Shown one piece after another: positions 21,456 through 32,472 of a DNA stretch of 64,000 nucleotides. Within the stretch, counting starts at the first letter, position 1, and each line of letters begins with the position of its first letter. Under the pieces are notes generated by a model. It searched no databases and was not told the DNA's origin. It was given only the letters and a program-made list of their open reading frames with translations. Position numbers and translations under genes: made by a program. This DNA is from Oikopleura dioica. Its lineage: Eukaryota > Animalia > Chordata. The stretch covers positions 14,198,001 to 14,262,000 of the forward strand of contig OU015568.1 of the NCBI GenBank assembly GCA_907165135.1. Reading direction: 5' to 3'.

Positions 21456-24400
21456 TTTACAGCCTTTATCAGCTTCTTCCTCAAATGCGGCCCTAAATGT
21501 CCACTCGAGGGAGGAAATTTTTGTCACTTATCAATCAAAATTTCGAAAAAATTCCAATTTTTTCTCGACCTCAAGTTCTAAAACCGATGAAATACTGTAT
21601 AAATAAAGCAATGACCGAAGGAGATTTCGATGATGGCTGTATGTATCAATCTGTACAAATCCCTGACAATTGAAGACATAAATGACAGCACGCGAAAACC
21701 CAAATTATATTCAAAAGAATTGGCAAGACCAAGACACACCGACAGAATGACAATAATGACTCCTTTATTCTTGAGAATGAATTAATCGATGCAACAAATT
21801 ATGTTGAAAATCCAGCTCTCCAGAATACGCGAGATAAAGTGGAAACAGTGAGTTGCTTCGGAAATGTCATTTGGCTTACGGTAATGACACATTTTCAAAG
21901 CTGGCGTATATTGATTTTCCAGACATTTTGAGACGACATTGGCGGAAATATCACACCGGGATACATCGCGCTAGATTTATGGCTCGTGAAACACGGAAGT
22001 GGATGGTCGGTTTACGACCACTAATTTTCATACTTTCCAGTTTTCCGAAGTTCAAGACTCTTCAATATTTCGAACTCAACTTGCGACATTCTCTTTTGCC
22101 AGATGCAGAAACTCGCAAGAATTAAATAGATCAGAATCGCTTTATTTTGAACGAGAAAACTGAGCCGGTTTTCTTCGAAACCATCAATTAGTCGAAATTC
22201 GCCTCATTACAATTCTGATCAAATTCATAAAGTTGTAATTGAAGGGAATCTGCCGGATGCGGCACTCGATCCATCAACTTTTACAAGGGAAGTCGCGCGC
22301 ATCAGGAAAAATAATATGAGATGGAGGAAAGCTGAAACCGCCAATTGCACTGAAGTCTTTTTGAAGAGTCACCTTCAAGGTCGAATATTGAAGCTTCAAA
22401 GCTGTACGAAATGATTTTGAATTTTTGGACCGATTCCCGAGGGAGCAGCAGTAGTTGTGCTCCGTCGGAGATTTCGATTTGAAGTGACAGCCCTGTCGAA
22501 GCCGCTCAATTCGCCCAGACAAGCACAACTTATTTCGACAAGTCAAAGTCACAAATCAATATTAACCTGGGAATTCAGAGATTTGCAAAAAAAAATATTG
22601 AACTCAATTGAGCAATGAGCGATCTTGCCCTGAGAATTTATATCTGTTGGTCAATTAATGAAGTGACCCGCTAAAATTGGCGTAAAATGACAGCGTAAAT
22701 CAAAAAAGCATCATCAAAACATAACCCGGAAATCCTCGTTGACTTCTATATAGCTTCAACTTATTGTCATATCTTATCGTTCTCTCGTAAAACTCAAGTC
22801 GTTATTTATCGGCTGATCTCGGCCCCGATGAGTAAATCAACGGAGACTTGTTAGAGAGTGCCGGAAGTGCTCGTACGTCAAGGCTTGTTTCAGCCGCTCT
22901 CATCTAACCTCACTGAATGACTAAACAAAAATCACATTTGTTAATAAAATTATACTTTTCAATGAATACTTTCCAAGCTAAATCACTTCAGAGTTTTCTT
23001 ACCATCTTTTTTGAGGTAAAATTTACTAAATTATTTGTTTTTAACAAAACTTACAGCAGTCGAAAATCCCATTCAGTGACCTTGCCAAACATGCATCTAA
23101 AAGTTAATTGACTCAATTGACAGGTTTGATAGGAATAGAAGTTGGCCGCGCAATGAAACATGACTTGAATTTGGCCACAGAAATTGAAAGAATAAAATAA
23201 GAAAGTAAAAAAGCGCTGCAAATATTTGAATCTGTCAAAATATGGGCGCCGATGCACTCGAGATATTCGCACGCTAAGGGCGGCTACCCAACATTTGATA
23301 ATGACGCAAATATTTGGCCCATTTGCTACCGTAGGTTTTTTCCATATGGCCTGGGAAAATACATCATTGGTATCTGTACCGAGAAGATAGAAGCAAAGGC
23401 ATTAACTGTTGACTAATTCACTGTTGTCTTTAATGCTTCATAATCGACAGCTGAGGCATCAATTGCTGTCTCTGCAATACATACGATCCCATATTGACAC
23501 CACAAATTGATCATACCCTCGAATCGTGATTTATGTCGACATTCGAAGTTTCATTTTTTCCCGAAGGGTCACGTGCCCTTCGGAGGCTATAAAATTGGAG
23601 TTTGACAGAATGACAGCCGGAAAGGGACCCCTAAAGTGTCGTTTATGGGAGCAGTACTAATCGTGTGGAATTTCCGAGGATTCGGGAAGGCGCACGCGAC
23701 GGATATTTTTATGATCAGTTAATTAGACAGTTGATTAGCCGTTCTTGCGGTTACTCAAGAATGGTCTCTTCTTTGAGAAGTTCGAGCGTATTCAGTAGCC
23801 CGAATCTTCGAATGATGGACAGCTCGATTCTGACTTGACATAGTAATGCAAAGATAGAGTCGATCGAGTAGCAACTGTATTAAACAGAGAAGAACTCATG
23901 TTTGTCGACTGTCGGGCCATTCGGTTACAGTTCTTGCTTCACGAGCGCTAGTATTGCTGTTTGCGCCGCGTCAAGTTGAGTCCATTGAAGTCGATGTTGC
24001 CTGTTTGCGATGGTTGACAGGCCTCTTCGGGCAACCTCTTGAGCCTGACAAAATTGTATTTGCGGACCTGCTTAAACTTTGATCCAGATCACCCGCAAGC
24101 TTATCCTTCTCATCAGCTTTTTCGACGCTAGAAAGTGCATACCGTAACTGATTTACCGCCATTTGAATGCCGTGTTACAGTATTTTCCTTTTTTCTATGC
24201 TGACATTCTGGACAGTCAACTTCAGTCTCTTTGATGAGTTAGCATCAACGCTCCAGAAGACACTGGCTATGTAGATAACAGATGGAGCTAACTTCGCTGA
24301 TCCAAGGAGAGATCATTAATCGAGTTGTCTTCGTTGATTGCCCCCTGCCGACATCAAGTCTAACCTCTGAGAAAAAAACTCTGAATATTGACTCAATGCG

Positions 24401-24912
24401 TTAAAATGATAAATTTCTTTTTATCAGCTGGTTATTTTTTTCCTAAAACATACAAATTTATCCTTTTGTCTCAAACTTTATTCTTATAAATTTCTAGACG
24501 GGGTTACGTAAATCATCTGATACCCAAAATCAATTGTTTCAAAAAATTAAAATAAAGTAAACATTAAAAACATGATGCTTACGCCACCACCAGTTAACTT
24601 TCGTCTTCCCACCAGAACTGGGTCATTACATAACACCTTTTCCATGCAATTGAGTGCTGATTCGGTTACGTAACGTGCCCTCCGGTTCCTCATCGACAAC
24701 AGAATTGCCTATTTTTTCAGGATCTGGCTCGAAAATCGTTACTCTTTTTATTGCCACTTCGAAAAATAAATCAGATTTTGAACTTTTTCCGTTTATTCCC
24801 TCTTCTTCCGTTCAAAGTTCAGAGATTGAAAAAAAAGACGAAAATTTCCTCAGAGACTCCCTTTCTTTATATTTATTTATTCTACTGATTGCTTTATTTT
24901 CAAGAAGGTGCG

Positions 24913-26980
24913 ATGACAATCGGCGAGCGCATCGGATTCGTCACCTTGGCCACGACTGACAGCTACGCTGCTGGAGCTCTCGTCCTAGCGCGATCACTTA
25001 GACAAGTCAATACTGTTGCCGAACTCGTCTGCTTGGTAAAACCTCTCTATTATTTTAATTTTTTTATAAATCTCCCTCCTAGGTCAGCAATTCTATCAGT
25101 GAAGGAACTCGAACCCGACTCGCGTCCGAATTCGATGATGTTATCGTTGTTGACGTTCTCAACTCCAACGACGATGCTATGCTCACGCTTTTGAAGCGAC
25201 CAGAGCTTGGTGTCACACTGACAAAGGTACGAAAACCCTCCTCTCTCCCTGTTGAATTTATCTTTTTAAGCTTCATTGCTGGAAACTGACCCAGTATAAT
25301 AAAATGGTATTCCTCGACGCTGACGCCCTGGTCGTCAAGAACATTGACGATCTCTTCCAACGGGAGGAAATCTCCGCTGTTGCCGATTGTGGCTGGCCAA
25401 GTTGCTTCAACTCCGGCGTTTTTGTCTTCAAGCCATCCGTGGACACATTCAACGAGCTGATCGAATTCGCAAAGAACGAGGGAAGCTTTGACGGTGGCGA
25501 TCAAGGCCTCTTGAACGACTTCTTTTCCGATTGGTCCACAAAATCCATCGATAGAATTCTCCCCTTCGGATACAACGTCCACGCCGCCGCTACCTACGCT
25601 TATGTCCCTGCTTTCCGTCGATTCAAAGATCAGGTCAAGGTCGTCCACTTTCTCGGTAGCACCAAGCCCTGGACATCCAAGAATCCACCACAGGGCGAAT
25701 TCTCCCAATTCTGGCAGCTCTGGTGGTCTCTCTACGAGTCCAATAACCAGGCAAAAAGCTCCGAAAACGTCTCCCAGAACACTTCAAACAATAACTCCGT
25801 CGAAACGCCTGTCATGACGCCTTCAGGCTTCGCTGCTGTCGGCCAGAGTCAACCAGGATTCACACCAACTAGCCCTGCCAAAGCTGGATTCGACATTATC
25901 CAGGTACCTTTATTATTTATTTTTGCCGCTAACTGTCGATTTCTAGGACCATTTGAACGCTCAGCTCTCCTCCGAAGCTTCAGAACCCGCTCCAAAGTTC
26001 GACATCAAGCCATCAAAAGTAATGTTCTAAGAAGCGAAACATGTGCAATTTTAACTTGTCTTAACTTTAATAATATGCGGCATATTATATGCCCAATTGT
26101 ATGATCAAATCCGAATATAAAATAATGTGAAAAGACGATTCATTTGATTTTGTCGCAAAAGCATTTTCCACTTGAATTGAGCGATTGAAAAGAGCATGCT
26201 TTGAATCTCCCTTTTGTGGTGTTGTAAAAGTTAACGAATGTTTTCAGCTTGCACGGCCGGTTTTATTCCGAGAGCAGAGTCGCAAATCATCAGAGCCAGA
26301 TTCGGGACACGGATCAGAAGCAGAAGAGAGCAACAAAACTACTCCAAAGTTGAAAGCAAAGCCGAAGTTGATTCTCAAACAAGCAAGCCCTAAACTGCAG
26401 CTGAAATCGAGTCCTCCGATGTTCAAATCAGAGCCAAAACAGACAGCATTTCAGCCACAAGTTCCCCTCAAAACTTCTCAAATCTTGAAGAACGAGAACA
26501 AAATTCAAGAGGAAGAAATCACGGAAACCGTCGTTTTGACCCAACAAAAGTTGGTTCCAGAGCAACCGGAGCTCGTAGAAAGCAGCTTCTCGACTGATGA
26601 ATCTTCTTCTACCCACCCAAACACGTCGGATTATATCGAAGAAGCAAAACGAATCTGCGCCGGAGTTTTCAACAATATCTCGGAGCGGTTTTCCGGCGAA
26701 AAGGGCGAGGTCGAAAGCGAAGATTTCGAAAACGAAGAAAGTCGGGAAAGAGCCAGATCCTACGCGATTGTCGACGATAGAAGTAAGGATCTTTCAAAAG
26801 TCGTTCCAAACTAAGGCATTATTTTTAGGCATCTTGGCTACTGAGCGAGAAGAAGCTCCCATCAGAAAATCACCATCGATGACGGAATTGCTTTTATCGC
26901 AAAACGGCGTCCTCATTTTTGGAATCCTCGGTGCCATCGTCTCCGCTGGATACATGTACTTCCGATACCAATACTCCTAG
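24913..26980 (+). CDS. GYG1: Glycogenin (GT8) with long C-terminal extension and transmembrane tail
   Basis: [77 protein letters not shown] (autoglucosylation Tyr region) and [11 protein letters not shown]. Further GT-AG exons at 26248-26782 and 26829-26980 end [24 protein letters not shown]. Confidence 0.95.
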
Positions 26981-27535
26981 AAACATTGACACTGTCATTC
27001 TTCAACAGACCACCTTTCCCACCGATAGAAAAATGAAACAAGCACGAAACTGAAACAGTTCACAAAGACACAAACCGTTACTTATTCAATAAATAATGTT
27101 AAAAATACCCATCAATCGAAAACTTTCTTCGAGAAAAACCTTTGAAAGGGATTTTGTGTGAAAAACTGGTTTCCGGCTAATCCCCGCCGGAAGAATTTCA
27201 TCAAATAACGGCCTGACAGCTGAAGAATTTAACTATTCGTAGCGCATCGATCCATTCTTTGCCATTCTCATATTCTTAATCCTTCAAAAGGTCATTTTCT
27301 CGTACTTTTTCCTTGTAAAAATAAGATCATCTCCAAGATAATTGATCCTTTTGCGTCGTTTCATTGGCTCAAACAGAGAAATCGCGCTGGTGGATTGGCG
27401 CGGTGGTAGTTCAATAAAGCAGGAAAATGTGCGAAAATAGAGCAATAAAATATAAAAACTCTCTGCATGAGATTTCCGAAACTCCCGCGAAGCGTAAATC
27501 AGGTGCGTAATCAGCATAAAATCTAATCGATTGAT

Positions 27536-27607
27536 CCCGCGCGCCAAACGCAGCGTTTGAATAGCGCGCGCCGCTCCCATTGGCGGATTTGAACGAAATC
27601 AGCCAAT
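27536..27607 (+). promoter_or_regulatory. Cell-cycle-type promoter motifs upstream of Citron (E2F-like, CHR TTTGAA x2, CCAAT x2)
   Basis: CCCGCGCGCCAAA at 27536, TTTGAA at 27556 and 27588 (the second follows TGGCGG), ATTGG near 27579 and CCAAT near 27603. Confidence 0.4.
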
Positions 27608-27703
27608 ACAACCGTGACGAGGCTGCAGGCGCTGTATTTGGCCGACAATTATTACTCGCAATTTTCGTCTAATTTTTGAATCACCGGAATTCTGAAATTC
27701 AGA

Positions 27704-30700
27704 ATGTCGGACTCAGAGAGGGATAAACTTATTGAATCAATCTGCAGATTAAAAGCGGAAAGAGATCAACTCAGAAAGAAAGAAGAAAAATGGACTCAAG
27801 AACGAGACAGAGTAAAAAAGGTAAGAATGATAGAAAATTCCTCAAATAACAGTAAACTAGGGAATGAGAGAGATGGTCGACAAAGAAATGGCGAAAAGAG
27901 CAGAGACAAAACGAAAGTATGAGGCGAGAATCAGTCAACTGCTAGAAACCATTGAAGCTGAGAAAGAAAATTTCTCGGGAAAGCAAGCTGAATTCTCAAA
28001 CTATCAAAGAAAATTGAGAGAGCAAAGTCTTGAACTGGAGAAAACAAAGTAAATGCAACTCATTTTTAAGTCCCTTGACCATTTTTAGCAACGACAAGAA
28101 TCAGCTCAACAGGCAGATTTCCCAGCTTCAAGATGAAATCGATCAGCACGAGCAAGACTTGCGCGATTTCCAAACGCTTCAGAAAGACTACAAATCGCTA
28201 GAAAATAGAAACATCCGTCTGCAGTCAAAGCTCGACGAGATCAACGCCATAAAACGCGAAAGAGATGAACTCTCCCAAAATCTGCTCGTCTCCGAAGCCG
28301 AAGCCCGTTCAAAACGCGAACAACTCGAAAAGTTGCGCAACGAACTTGACGTAGCCAAAGCAAAGTGTGTGAAAATCAAGTCAGAATACGATTCCGTCAT
28401 CAAAAAAGAACGCGCCAACGTCGAGAACAGAAATGAAGCGATCATCCGAGAATTCGAGCAGCAAATCAACGAGTTGGAAAATACAATCGACGAGCAAAAT
28501 CGCGATCTGAAGCAGCTCCAAGCTCAAGTGCGGCAAATATCGCAAGAGTCCGACGAATATCAATCTCAACTGGCGATGGCGAACGAGAAGATTCAATCGC
28601 TCGAGTGGGATTATAAACAATCAAAAAAGGAGCTAGAATCGATGAAGCGCAAGGAGTCGAGCCAGGCGCAGAATTTGGAGCACAAAATCAGCGAAATTGA
28701 AGACGAGCGAGATGTTCTCATGGCGAATCTGAACGCGAAAAACAGCGAAATGGCGCAACTCAAGACCATCTTGACGAACACCGAGGATGACCGAAACGAT
28801 CTGGTTCGCCAGTTGAGCGCGGCGAGGGAAGAACACGCGCAGCTGAGAAGAGAGCACGACTCAAGACAAAAGAAAGATGTCGAATCTGAAGCTAGCCAGA
28901 AACTACGCTTGGACGAGCTTAAAATTGAGAATCAGAGACTGAACAGGGATATCGAGTCCTTGTCCCAGCAACTTGACGACAAAGAACACGATGTCGCGGA
29001 CTTGAGAATCAGCTGCGAGGAAAAACAATCCCAAGTTGAAGACCTTCAAGATCGCCTGCGAAACGCAGAAGATAACCAGCGTCAACGAGCTCTAGAAGTG
29101 TCAAGAATCGAACAAAACCGAGAAGCAGATCGGCTCCAGAGCCAGCTTGATCTAAAAAACGCCGATTTACGCCGGGCAATCGAGCAAGAGTCTCGTCTGC
29201 AAACTAAATTAGACACTCTTCAATCTGATTACGAGTTGCTTCTCAGCCAAGTCGAAGACAGGGACACAGAACTGGAAAATATAAGATCACAGATGGTCTC
29301 GTTAGAAGCTGAGCGAGACGATCTTCTTCTAACCGTCTCCCAGCAAGATGCGTCGAAAAAGAGTGACGATGCAGAAACTAAGAAAGAGGCTAGAAGAGAG
29401 CTAGAAAGCGCCAGACGAGAATTCAAAAATGAAAAGGACTTGCTGCGAAGAGAAATCGTCCAGCTAGATCGACAAGTTGTTACGCTCAAAGAAAACTACA
29501 GAAAACTAGAGACAGAGCATGCGGAAGAAAGAGATGAGTCCCAACGACTTCGACAAGAACTACTTCGCGCAAATGACAACTCAGGCGATGTGCAAGCCAA
29601 AGCCGATCAGATCAGCGCGTTGAAGATAAAAATGCGCGTTCTTGAGCAAGAAAAGGCGACTCTGATGGAAGCTGTAGATGGAATGGAAGATGAGGTTAAT
29701 GGAAAAGAGTCTGAGATTCAAAAACTTCAGCACGAGATTCGTCTTGGCGAGAAAGAACGAAAGAACTTCGAAAAAATCGTGATTGAAGAAAGGGCAAGAG
29801 CAGAGGCGGTCGAAGCTGAATTCAATGTGCGAAATCGTCGAACAAACGATGATGACCTAAAGATAGAAACGCTTGAGGAAGAAATCGAACAGCTAGAAAG
29901 ACGATTCGGCCGTGAACGCGAAAAACTCACTCAAGAAAACGAACTCCTTTCAGCGCAGAACAGGGATTTGCAGAAAAAACTTCAGCGAAAAGACCGCGAA
30001 ATAATTGAAGCAGAGGATGAGAGACTCGGTCAGATTGAGGAGTCAGATCAACAAGTGGTTGAACTCATGAAAAAGTTAAAAAGCGAGCGTGCAAAGCGAG
30101 ATCTGATGGAGCAGGAGTTTCAAAAGTACGAGCGTGATCATCTTGAATCCGTGCGAGCTATGAAACTTGATCAAGCAACTGCGATGGAGCATTTTAAAGA
30201 AACCAAAAAGCTTCAGAAAGAGATCGATCAGCTAACCGGACAAGTTCTCGCTGAGCGCGAGAAAAACAACCAATTCAAGCACGAGAACAGCGACTTGAAG
30301 ATAGACCAAGAGCGCAACCGACAGATCAATCATCAGCAAGCGAAGCTTATTGAAATGCTCCAAAGGCAGAATGAAGAACTCACCCCGAAGAAGCTAAAAA
30401 AGAAGAATAAAGGAATGACTCCTAATTATGCCCCGCCTCCACTCTACAAAGACCTCGAGAAGCAAATTGATCAATTGCGAGTTGAGAATTCCAAGCTCAA
30501 ATCTAAGCTCTATGGTTCCAATACAGATCTTGACAAGATTCCTACAAAAGCGAAGCTTTCAAGTAAATCACGAGAAGCATCTCCAAGTAAACCTCCTCGA
30601 TCATTTGCAGAAAAACTCAACATTCGCAAATCTATCTCACCAATGGATCCTTTCCCAGCTTCATATGTCGGCTTATGTGCTGTGTCCAGCCTGCCTGTTT

Positions 30701-32472
30701 ACATCGGAGACATGATTGTCAAAAAAAAGCTGGTCTAATCGCGCACGAGCGCTTTTCAAATGAGTTCACGTTCCTACTAAGCAATTCCAAAAAAGGAAAG
30801 AAGGACCGGAACTTCAATGGAAACCTCCTTTACCTGTACAGGGGCGAATGGGCTAGAGTCACTGGTCGAGTAGAAGGCACCTCGCTTGTTCTCGCAGGTG
30901 ACTCGTTTGAAGAAGCAATTGATCTAAAATCCAACATTGCTCTTCACGGCGCAGTCTGCTTCGATCACGTGAAATTCATGGCAGAAGTTGATCACGAATT
31001 CTGCTTCGGAATCGAGCACATTCCAGCTTCGTTCGGTTCCAAGTACCGCCCTGAAATGGAGTACTTCTGCGCTCTGAACCTTTCCGATAAACAGAACTGG
31101 TTCGAGACATTGAAAGATATCGTCAATTCTCCGCCGAGTTTACCTGCAAACGATCATAACAAGTTCGACGTTCAAAAAGTTCATTCGTTCCAAGATAAAA
31201 TTCCTGATATTTGTTGCAGTACTCAGGTAACCCTTATTTATTCGATAAAAACTAACTTTGCATAAGATCGATGGATATACCCTCATTGGCTCAACAGACA
31301 ACCTTCTGGCGACAGACGGCAAAACCATTGTCGTCGCATCCAAAGCGCCGATAGTTGAGTTGGAGTCCTTCGAAGATCTCGTATTTGGAATAGGTTACAG
31401 AGAGCGATATCCAGTCTTTTTCTACGCCGACGGAGTCCGAAGTCTTATTCGAAGCAAAGTTCAAATCACATTCAACAGAATAACAAAAGAAAGAGTTCAC
31501 GTTATCAAGGCAGGACGATATCAAGGAAAATATGCTCTTGCTGCCGCATTCAACACGTAAATAATCTGGAAAAACTCATCAAGCTCAATTTGTTTTTAGG
31601 ACAATCAAGCTCTTCCAGTTCTCTAAACAGCACGCGCTTGATAAAGAGTACGAAGTCCTCGAAGTTCTCCGCGTCAAACTTGACAGTGCTCCATCATCAC
31701 TTGCCTTTTCCTCAAGCTCATTGATCTGCGGAACCGACAGAATCATCGAAGTCGACTTCCATAAACAAACAGCTGAACCGTATCTTGCCGAGTCCGAGCT
31801 TCGCAAAACCCACCAAGAGAAGCCTATTGATATGTTTGCGCTTTATGATGGAGGAAAGGTAGAAAATAACGATTTTAATAGAAAACTTATCGTATTCAAG
31901 GAGCGGCATCTAATCTGTGGGCAACATGGAGGATACTTAGTAGACAACTGCGGCCGAATCGTCCAGCGAATCAACTGGTCATCCCTTCCACTCGACTTCA
32001 AGTACTCCGAACCCTACCTCTTCGTATCCCACATGTTCGGCATCGAACTCGTGAAGATCGGCATTGCACAAGTTTCCCAGCCGATCATTCTATCTTCCTT
32101 CCGGCCGAGACTTTTGGGCGTGGCAGGCGAAGGACAGGTAACATGATGATTCCTCGGCAACTAATAATCATTATTTATTCAGCTCATATTGCTCTCGCGT
32201 CCGTATGGAGAGAAGCGGTCCGCCTCGGCGACGGTGAAAATTTTATCCGGCACTGAAGAGATCGAATATGACGAAGCCATCAGTGGCCCAAGTTCGCTAA
32301 ACTCCCACATCGGCCTAGCTTACAGACCATCTAGGTATTGTCAAAAATAAGCATCAGCCATTCAAATATATTCAGAGCATACCGACAAACCGCTCCAAGG
32401 ATCGAGCCTCGGTTCGAGCTCCAAAATGAAACCACTTCCTCGGGCATGATGGAATACTCTGTCTACCGATAA
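27704..32472 (+). CDS. CIT: Citron (CIT)-like protein without kinase domain: coiled coil, degenerate C1, PH, CNH
   Basis: About 900 aa of coiled coil. HQQAKLIEMLQ...KKK...PPLYKDLEKQI resembles the Citron QQTKLIDFLQ...KKKK...PLQYNELK segment. PH domain ends ...KQNWFETLKDIV and a CNH domain follows over several exons. Reading-frame break at the A8 run 30721-30728. Confidence 0.85.

What the first reader, a model, noticed from the sequence alone, without database searches (positions are those of the whole stretch)
25860..26980. Glycogenin with a spliced-on tail anchor: membrane-tethered glycogen priming
After the GT8 domain and a helix resembling the glycogen-synthase-binding motif (GFDIIQDHLNAQL versus vertebrate SFDNIKRKLDTYL), the donor at 26019 splices in phase to a 178-aa acidic/Pro-rich exon. 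A last exon then ends in a 19-aa hydrophobic helix plus RYQYS-stop, a classic tail anchor. Read-through of the 26019 donor gives a soluble isoform ending KPSKVMF* (26030). Characterised glycogenins are soluble, so alternative splicing could switch glycogen nucleation between cytosol and an organelle membrane.
Basis: partly seen in the sequence, partly recalled or inferred. Interest (0 to 1): 0.8.

Follow-up and report, generated by a model that had tools for sequence, protein, structure and literature searches.

The report
Tail-anchored splice isoform of glycogenin
The glycogenin gene of the planktonic tunicate Oikopleura dioica makes the usual soluble glycogen primer and also a conserved spliced form ending in a single membrane-spanning helix, which would tie the seed of a glycogen granule to an organelle membrane; both forms are already in sequence databases, but I found no study of this feature.

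Summary
The six-exon model (24913-26980, +) is in frame and 552 aa long. It is identical to GenBank CAG5090158.1 (O. dioica OKI2018_I69 PAR g12481.t2). The read-through form (327 aa, ending KPSKVMF) is identical to isoform t1.

RNA reads show both the 26018>26248 junction and read-through of that donor. Divergent O. dioica lineages yield full-length cDNA contigs joining the GT8 domain to the tail. One of them carries the spliced leader at its 5' end and an AATAAA near its 3' end.

The tail exons are under purifying selection (omega 0.1-0.24 at dS above 1.3). They hold no conserved start codon, so they are not a separate gene. The last 24 residues are a 19-aa hydrophobic helix (GRAVY 1.9-2.1) followed by a +1 five-residue tail. 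This is a textbook tail anchor and favours the ER.

The tail has no relatives outside O. dioica among 1.84 billion representative proteins. However, predicted glycogenin isoforms of Aedini mosquitoes and a springtail also end in hydrophobic helices.

Membrane insertion is inferred, not shown. The resemblance to the glycogen-synthase-binding motif is positional only and is not statistically supported. The closest functional analogues are PPP1R3F, PPP1R3A and STBD1. I rate this a new variant of a known kind, of moderate interest.

The parts
24905..24912 (+). 5' UTR after the spliced-leader trans-splice acceptor (AG at 24903-24904)
   Evidence: Contigs L006 and L007 carry the spliced-leader 3' end (...GATTGTCTAACAG) joined directly to AAGGCGCC-ATG. 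The window reads ttttcaag|AAGGTGCG-ATG.
24913..25903 (+). Exons 1-3: GT8 catalytic domain and Ser/Asn-rich linker. DAD is at 25316-25324 and the acceptor-Tyr region TYAYVPAF at 25592-25615.
   Evidence: Pfam PF01501 E 8.5e-15 on exon 3 alone. E 1.2e-87 to human glycogenin-1 3t7m over residues 8-230. Introns 1 and 3 are spliced in X1 contigs.
25886..26018 (+). End of exon 3 plus exon 4: helix GFDIIQDHLNAQL and the conserved [13 protein letters not shown] end shared by both isoforms
   Evidence: Conserved in both O. dioica paralogs and all lineages. It sits where the glycogen-synthase-binding helix sits in 94 of 122 relatives. The GN34 profile score is -1.6 bits, no better than shuffles.
26019..26247 (+). 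Alternative intron 4 (229 nt, against 43-47 nt for the other introns). When retained, VMF plus TAA (26019-26030) ends the soluble 327-aa isoform.
   Evidence: Junction 26017/18>26248 seen in 2+5 reads. Read-through seen in 4 reads and in X1 contig 3, which has intron 3 removed. GTAATGTTCTAA is conserved in genomic contigs L002 and L003. Short-form contigs are P0006, P0139, P0138, P0131 and P0135.
26248..26782 (+). Exon 5: 178-aa disordered E/S/K/P-rich spacer with three conserved blocks. These are [24 protein letters not shown] at 26248-26319, an amphipathic helix [30 protein letters not shown] at 26614-26703, and [13 protein letters not shown] at 26743-26781.
   Evidence: Alignment A1. Omega 0.19-0.24 at dS 1.3-2.0. 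AF2 predicts disorder except for a helix at tail residues 141-164, pLDDT about 85. No Pfam hit. No relatives outside O. dioica.
26783..26828 (+). Intron 5 (46 nt)
   Evidence: Absent at exactly this position from cDNA contig L001. No reads of this window's own lineage cover it.
26829..26980 (+). Exon 6: juxtamembrane [21 protein letters not shown], the 19-aa transmembrane helix at 26906-26962, the tail RYQYS at 26963-26977, and TAG
   Evidence: Kyte-Doolittle GRAVY is 1.87 (2.11-2.14 in other lineages) and tail charge is +1. It is the only segment of the protein above 1.6; the next best is 1.36, within the GT8 domain (residues 7-25). AF2 helix pLDDT is about 89. Omega is 0.10-0.11.
26981..27093 (+). 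3' UTR of the long isoform, with AATAAA at 27088-27093
   Evidence: The orthologous AATAAA lies close to the 3' end of full-length cDNA contig L007.

Best explanation
This is one glycogenin gene of Oikopleura dioica (PAR g12481) with two protein products, chosen at the exon 4 donor. If the 229-nt intron 4 is kept, translation stops after three more codons. The result is a 327-aa soluble glycogenin of ordinary design. If the intron is removed, the same catalytic domain and the same C-terminal helix are followed by about 200 disordered residues and one C-terminal transmembrane helix, giving 552 aa. With no signal peptide and only five residues after the helix, this form should be inserted post-translationally as a tail-anchored protein with the enzyme facing the cytosol. 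The moderately high helix hydrophobicity and the +1 tail charge favour the ER. Glycogenin stays covalently attached to the glucan it primes, so the long form would seed granules that are physically tied to the membrane. The disordered spacer has a contour length of about 70 nm, long enough to span the radius of a beta-particle. Shown here: both mRNAs exist, the tail is conserved as coding sequence, the tail-anchor sequence features are present, and the catalytic motifs are intact. Inferred: membrane insertion, the target organelle, catalytic activity of the anchored form, and the effect on where glycogen forms.
For: The gene model is in frame and identical to GenBank isoforms t2 and t1. The 26018>26248 junction is read in 7 reads of 2 oligo-dT RNA runs, and read-through in 4 reads and one metatranscriptome contig. 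cDNA contigs L001, L005 and L007 from divergent lineages lack exactly the three predicted introns and carry one ORF from GT8 to the tail. L007 starts with the template-switch end ACATGGGG, then the 40-nt spliced leader, and ends close after AATAAA. It is therefore essentially a complete mature mRNA. The long form was assembled independently many times (P0003, P0005, P0124, P0129, P0132, P0134, P0137), and so was the short form. Purifying selection acts on exon 5 (omega 0.19-0.24) and exon 6 (0.10-0.11) at dS of 1.3 or more. Exon 5 is conserved from its first codon and has no conserved Met. There is a single 19-aa hydrophobic segment five residues from the end, with GRAVY 1.87-2.14 and tail charge +1, and nothing comparable elsewhere in the protein. 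AF2 predicts a confident helix there. Costello et al. 2017 (PMC5450235) report that a hydrophobic TMD with low tail charge supports ER targeting, and that yeast ER tail-anchored proteins have GRAVY above 1.75. GT8 is intact: E 1.2e-87 to human GYG1, with DAD and the acceptor-Tyr region present. Predicted hydrophobic C-terminal ends also occur on glycogenin isoforms in Aedini mosquitoes and Orchesella.
Against: No localisation or insertion data exist. Read support on this window is thin: 26 reads, all 90-99% alike, so from other lineages. The junction was not read in the window's own Okinawa-type lineage. The helix is rich in Gly, Ala and Ser, and GRAVY 1.87 is borderline between ER and mitochondria. 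The short form could partly be unspliced precursor, because no poly(A) site inside intron 4 was found. The tail is confined to the O. dioica species complex, so it is evolutionarily young. A canonical GN34 glycogen-synthase-binding motif is not detectable, so the coupling to glycogen synthase is uncertain.
Confidence: 0.7

Rival explanations
1. The isoforms and the tail-anchor mechanism are as in the best explanation, but the target is the mitochondrial outer membrane or peroxisomes rather than the ER. Glycogen seeding would then sit next to mitochondria.
For: The helix is only moderately hydrophobic in this lineage (GRAVY 1.87) and rich in Gly, Ser and Ala. A basic residue follows it directly. 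Costello et al. show that small shifts in hydrophobicity or tail charge move tail-anchored proteins between the ER and mitochondria.
Against: Tail charge is only +1. In that paper, constructs cut to +0.9 went mainly to the ER, while +2.9 gave mitochondria and +4.9 peroxisomes. Other lineages have GRAVY 2.11-2.14. Those rules come from mammals and yeast, not from tunicates.
Confidence: 0.17
2. The long mRNA is real and conserved, but the hydrophobic end is not a stable membrane anchor. It could act as a quality-control or degradation signal, or as a protein-protein or self-association helix (it has small-xxx-small spacing), that regulates glycogenin amount or clustering.
For: An invariant DSGHGS sequence (a beta-TrCP-degron-like DSGxxS) opens the tail. 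The helix contains G-x-x-G and G-x-x-x-S spacings. No localisation data exist.
Against: A 19-aa uncharged helix five residues from the C-terminus, preceded by basic residues and kept at omega about 0.1, fits the tail-anchor definition fully. Degrons do not need such a helix.
Confidence: 0.09
3. Exons 5-6 (26248-26980) are, or also are, a separate downstream operon gene trans-spliced at the 26247 acceptor, encoding a small tail-anchored protein unrelated to glycogenin.
For: O. dioica uses operons and spliced-leader trans-splicing. Intron 4 is unusually long (229 nt) and resembles an intercistronic spacer. In metagenome scaffold L003 the GT8 part has an in-frame stop and relaxed constraint while the tail stays open.
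Against: The junction reads and three cDNA contigs join the parts in one ORF. No loose spliced-leader ends were reported at 26248, although depth was low. The first 24 codons of exon 5 are among the best conserved, and there is no conserved ATG: the first Met is at tail residue 58 here and at 97-106 elsewhere, and these positions do not align. Searches found no annotated protein consisting of the tail alone.
Confidence: 0.04

Closest known systems
Glycogenin-1 and -2 (GYG1/GYG2; GT8 self-glucosylating primer of glycogen)
   Same: The catalytic domain is a clear orthologue: E 1.2e-87 to human GYG1 structures, with the DxD motif and acceptor-Tyr region conserved. The domain order of GT8, variable linker and short C-terminal helix is the same (PMC9188544).
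   Different: Characterised glycogenins end at or shortly after the glycogen-synthase-binding GN34 region and are soluble. Here an alternative 228-aa extension ends in a transmembrane helix. The GN34 first half (W-E-x-G-x-x-D-Y-x-G) is missing and the second helix is not significantly similar.
PPP1R3F and PPP1R3A (GM): membrane-bound glycogen-targeting subunits of protein phosphatase 1
   Same: These are glycogen-metabolism proteins fixed to ER or SR membrane through the C-terminal end. PPP1R3F is listed as a tail-anchored protein and was confirmed at the ER (PMC5450235). GM has an SR-binding domain and is found with glycogen synthase on SR membranes (PMC3240831).
   Different: They bind finished glycogen non-covalently through a carbohydrate-binding domain and recruit PP1. 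The Oikopleura protein is the primer itself and would be covalently joined to the granule. There is no sequence similarity.
STBD1 (starch-binding domain protein 1)
   Same: It tethers glycogen to ER membranes and organises glycogen-containing ER structures (PMC7648618).
   Different: From my own knowledge, STBD1 is anchored at its N-terminus, binds glycogen by a CBM20 domain and has no catalytic activity. There is no sequence similarity.
Predicted alternative C-termini of arthropod glycogenins (Aedes aegypti and Ae. albopictus RefSeq isoforms, Ochlerotatus, Orchesella cincta)
   Same: These are long glycogenin isoforms whose last 25-30 residues hold a hydrophobic helix 6-9 residues from the end, with 19-aa Kyte-Doolittle means of 2.0-2.45. 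Other mosquito isoforms end in a CaaX-like CTIL or in a Cys-rich polybasic motif.
   Different: They are unrelated in sequence to the Oikopleura tail, so they are independent inventions. They are computational gene models that I did not check against RNA.
Plant glycogenin-like GT8 proteins (PGSIP/GUX)
   Same: They are GT8 relatives of glycogenin that are membrane proteins (my own knowledge).
   Different: They are type II Golgi proteins with an N-terminal anchor and a lumenal catalytic domain that acts on xylan. The topology and the substrate differ.

Membership tests
Glycogenin (GT8, EC 2.4.1.186) | GT8 glycosyltransferase fold with close similarity to animal glycogenin | tested here: met
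   PF01501 E 8.5e-15 on exon 3 alone. phmmer E 1.2e-87 to human GYG1 3t7m over residues 8-230. UniRef names the protein glycogenin glucosyltransferase.
Glycogenin (GT8, EC 2.4.1.186) | DxD metal/UDP-glucose motif and the self-glucosylated tyrosine (human Tyr195) | tested here: met
   DAD is at residues 105-107, aligned to human [11 protein letters not shown] aligns to I-Y-S-Y-LPAF.
Glycogenin (GT8, EC 2.4.1.186) | C-terminal GN34 region that binds glycogen synthase (helix-turn-helix; PMC9188544) | tested here: inconclusive
   A helix with the F-D-x-I-x-x-x-L-x-x-x-L pattern sits at the expected place. A profile built from 133 metazoan GN34 regions scores it -1.6 bits, against a maximum of 4.1 for shuffles. 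The first half of the motif is absent. There was no PDB hit.
Glycogenin (GT8, EC 2.4.1.186) | Self-glucosylation activity | not testable with these tools
   This needs an enzyme assay.
Tail-anchored (type IV) membrane proteins | A single transmembrane helix at the extreme C-terminus, too close to the end to emerge from the ribosome before termination | tested here: met
   A 19-aa segment with GRAVY 1.87-2.14 ends 5 residues from the C-terminus. AF2 predicts a helix with pLDDT about 89.
Tail-anchored (type IV) membrane proteins | No N-terminal signal peptide and no other transmembrane segment | tested here: met
   The best 19-aa window elsewhere scores 1.36 and lies at residues 7-25, inside the GT8 domain that aligns to human GYG1 from residue 8.
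Tail-anchored (type IV) membrane proteins | Post-translational insertion (GET/TRC40, EMC or spontaneous) with the N-terminal part in the cytosol | not testable with these tools
   This is inferred from the sequence features only.

The most novel reading that the evidence does not exclude
Alternative splicing decides whether the covalent primer of a glycogen granule is free or fixed to the ER (or another organelle) membrane. Oikopleura would then grow granules that are covalently leashed to a membrane by a spacer of about 200 residues. The same solution has arisen independently in mosquitoes and springtails, which would make membrane-anchored glycogenin a recurrent and so far undescribed layer of spatial control of glycogen.
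Probability: 0.4. Interest if true: 0.7.

Novelty: new variant of a known kind. Interest (0 to 1): 0.5.

Why it matters
How glycogen granules are placed inside cells (next to SR, ER, mitochondria or lysosomes) is known only through non-covalent adaptors such as PPP1R3A, PPP1R3F and STBD1. A primer carrying its own membrane anchor would fix the granule core itself to a membrane. A splice choice would then set the ratio of free to tethered granules. O. dioica is a laboratory chordate with a compact genome, so the two isoforms could be tagged or removed separately. The predicted parallels in mosquitoes suggest the principle may extend beyond one odd lineage. In the other direction, both isoforms are already in GenBank and UniProt, the tail is lineage-restricted, and nothing about localisation has been shown.

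Tried and rejected
- **Separate operon gene for exons 5-6:** rejected on the junction reads, the continuous cDNA ORFs and the lack of a conserved start codon.
- **Relatives of the tail:** none found. Pfam gave nothing. The word-index search found only Oikopleura-type contigs. A profile search of 1.84 billion representatives gave 3 hits, all Oikopleura-type. The ESM Atlas gave no usable hit.
- **Structure of the tail:** mean pLDDT 52.5, with only two helices, so no fold search was worthwhile.
- **Significance of the glycogen-synthase-binding motif:** not significant.
- **Literature:** the terms glycogenin with tail-anchored, with transmembrane/membrane-bound, with Oikopleura, and with CAAX/prenylation/palmitoylation returned nothing relevant.
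- **Poly(A) site for the short isoform inside intron 4:** no AATAAA is present, and contigs L006 and X1-3 simply end, so this stays undecided.
- **Earlier notes of this scan:** nothing on this gene.

Full report
**What is in the sequence.** The window carries a six-exon gene on the + strand with very short introns (43-47 nt) and one long intron (229 nt). The exons are 24913-25035, 25083-25226, 25271-25903, 25947-26018, 26248-26782 and 26829-26980. Every intron is GT..AG. The joined CDS is 1659 nt and encodes 552 aa. Reading through the donor at 26019 adds Val-Met-Phe and stops at TAA 26028-26030, giving 327 aa. Exon 5 is rich in E, S, K and P, with net charge -6.

**Organism and public annotation.** The 327-aa form is identical to GenBank CAG5090160.1 (Oidioi.mRNA.OKI2018_I69.PAR.g12481.t1). 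The 552-aa model is identical to CAG5090158.1 (isoform t2) of Oikopleura dioica. The 2010 reference proteome holds a 561-aa long form, CBY08907.1 / UniProt E4XAZ8. Both isoforms are therefore already annotated. What I did not find described is the meaning of the C-terminal helix: four literature searches found nothing on a membrane-anchored glycogenin.

**Transcript evidence on the window.**
- I laid three oligo-dT RNA runs of the species and one marine metatranscriptome on 24200-28200. Only 26 reads and 5 contigs fitted, at 90-99% identity, because the runs come from other lineages of this very divergent species complex.
- Seven reads from 6 start positions in two runs join 26017/18 to 26248.
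- Four reads of one run continue past 26030 into diverged intron sequence.
- Metatranscriptome contig 3 has intron 3 removed but runs through the 26019 donor to 26112.
- No spliced-leader-like loose end was reported at 26248, but depth was low.
- No read covered the last intron.

**Transcript evidence from relatives.**
- Searching with exon 5 found four contig-encoded proteins. Contig L001 is a JGI metatranscriptome contig of 1808 nt. It carries one ORF from the GT8 domain through exons 4, 5 and 6 to the hydrophobic end.
- In a DNA alignment, L001 lacks exactly the window's introns 25904-25946, 26019-26247 and 26783-26828.
- L005 (Logan) encodes a complete 567-aa long form.
- L007 (JGI, 1871 nt) begins with ACATGGGG, which I read as a template-switch oligo end. 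It continues with the 40-nt spliced leader joined to AAGGCGCC-ATG, runs through the whole long ORF, and ends about 10 nt after an AATAAA. It is essentially a full-length mature mRNA of the long isoform.
- Short-form contigs are equally recurrent: P0006/L006 (which also carries the 3' end of the spliced leader at the same acceptor), P0139, P0138, P0131 and P0135. All end ...KPTNVMF.
- Genomic contigs L002 and L003 keep GTAATGTTCTAA at the donor while the rest of the intron diverges.
- The second O. dioica glycogenin (chr2 g4500, 448 aa) and its orthologue end at the equivalent place (...KFDIRI...KFDIKF) and have no hydrophobic end. A protein ending there is evidently functional, so the extension is specific to the PAR gene.

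**Is the tail a real coding region of this gene?**
- Against lineages with synonymous divergence of 1.3-2.0, exon 5 has omega 0.19-0.24 and exon 6 has 0.10-0.11. A 99-codon part of the GT8 domain has 0.008.
- The alignment shows four conserved blocks in an otherwise fluid sequence. These are the first 24 residues of exon 5, a 30-residue block around an amphipathic helix, [10 protein letters not shown](D/E)DR, and the juxtamembrane region plus helix.
- The first codons of exon 5 are among the best conserved. The first Met in the tail differs in position between lineages: residue 58 here and 97-106 elsewhere.
- A separate cistron starting inside exon 5 is therefore not supported.

**Tail-anchor features.**
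- The only strongly hydrophobic 19-aa window in the protein is residues 529-547, five residues from the end. The next best scores 1.36 and lies within the GT8 domain (residues 7-25).
- GRAVY is 1.87 in this lineage and 2.11-2.14 in others. The tail after the helix has charge +1.
- AlphaFold2 on the tail alignment predicts disorder, except for the conserved helix (pLDDT about 85) and the C-terminal helix (about 89).
- Costello et al. 2017 report that a hydrophobic TMD with a low tail charge supports ER targeting. They also report that yeast ER tail-anchored proteins have GRAVY above 1.75, and that constructs with tail charge near +0.9 go mainly to the ER (PMC5450235).
- I therefore favour the ER, with mitochondria as the main alternative.

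**The catalytic part.** It is intact: E 1.2e-87 to human glycogenin-1 structures, with DAD at 105-107 and the acceptor-tyrosine region conserved.

**The glycogen-synthase-binding motif.** GN34 is defined as the roughly 34 C-terminal residues forming a helix-turn-helix (PMC9188544). A pattern for its second helix is found near the C-terminus in 94 of 122 relatives, and at residues 296-307 here. However, a profile built from 133 distinct metazoan GN34 regions scores the Oikopleura segment at -1.6 bits, which is no better than shuffled sequence. The W-E-x-G-x-x-D-Y-x-G half is missing. A PDB sequence search with the region finds nothing. The resemblance is positional only.

**Relatives of the tail and parallels elsewhere.**
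- A profile of the tail searched against 1.84 billion representative proteins found three proteins, all Oikopleura-type. The ESM Atlas gave no usable hit.
- Among the 120 best relatives of the Oikopleura protein, only the Oikopleura PAR-type forms have a hydrophobic end.
- A second sample of 118 long glycogenins (396-1260 aa, almost all from arthropods) gave an unexpected result. Orchesella cincta glycogenin-1 and isoforms from Aedes aegypti, Ae. albopictus and Ochlerotatus end in hydrophobic helices 6-9 residues from the C-terminus, with 19-aa Kyte-Doolittle means of 2.0-2.45.
- Other mosquito isoforms end in CTIL (CaaX-like) or in a Cys-rich polybasic motif.
- These are unverified gene models and are unrelated in sequence to the Oikopleura tail. 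They do suggest that membrane-directing alternative ends on glycogenin have arisen more than once.

**Mechanism proposed.** One gene and one splice choice give a soluble primer or a tail-anchored primer with the enzyme in the cytosol. Glycogenin remains covalently bound to its glucan (established knowledge). The anchored form would therefore leash the granule to the membrane. The disordered spacer has a contour length of about 70 nm, which is enough for a beta-particle radius. Linker length in glycogenin is already known to affect particle size in vitro (cited in PMC9188544). The closest functional analogues are PPP1R3F (ER tail-anchored), PPP1R3A/GM (SR-binding) and STBD1. All three are non-covalent adaptors rather than the primer.

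**Verdict.** Membrane insertion and its consequences are untested. The gene models are already public. The feature is a new variant of a known kind, of moderate interest.

Noticed in passing
L003:1-1591 (ENA metagenome scaffold; aligns to about window 25430-27045, of which 25700-27045 was aligned directly): In a close relative of this gene the GT8 part looks decayed. There is an in-frame TAA in the linker, the acceptor-site tyrosines read F and H (ATFVHVPAF), and omega is 0.29 against 0.008 normally. Exons 4-6, including the transmembrane helix, stay open. This could be a pseudogene copy, an assembly error, or a lineage in which only the tail is kept.
   Followed up: partly
window 26299-26316: An invariant DSGHGS (DSGxxS, the pattern of beta-TrCP phosphodegrons), preceded by RKSS, lies in the conserved first block of the tail in all lineages. 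It may make the long isoform's stability regulatable. Short motifs like this can arise by chance.
   Followed up: no
window 26743-26781: An invariant R-x-R-A-R-S-Y-A-I-V-(D/E)-D-R contains a basophilic-kinase-type site (RxRxxS) directly before a Y-x-x-V core flanked by acidic residues. This looks like an LC3-interacting region and would echo the glycophagy adaptor STBD1. This is speculative.
   Followed up: no
window 26614-26703: The conserved amphipathic helix of the tail contains [10 protein letters not shown]. This weakly resembles the F-D-N-I-x-x-K-L core of the glycogen-synthase-binding helix (profile score -4.5 bits, not significant). It might be a second copy of that motif.
   Followed up: partly
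Proteins P0207, P0244 (ending FCTIL); P0183, P0199, P0214, P0217, P0240 (ending ...SC(I/L)(T/P)C(T/A)KR...); P0234, P0236, P0238, P0239, P0250, P0228 (hydrophobic helix): Mosquito glycogenin genes appear to offer three alternative C-terminal ends, each with a different membrane-affinity device: a tail-anchor-like helix, a CaaX-like box, and a Cys-rich polybasic end. A springtail glycogenin also ends in a transmembrane-like helix. I found no paper on this.
   Followed up: partly
window 27169-27208: Reads of run X8 match only this 40-nt stretch and run on into unrelated sequence on both sides (3 and 4 reads). This is probably a short conserved or repeated element between this gene and the next one.
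   Followed up: no
window 27704-30738: The next gene downstream on the + strand encodes a long coiled-coil protein, with a 902-aa ORF from 28030. An X1 contig shows a 43-nt skip at 28045>28089 with three other letters between the two sides.
   Followed up: no
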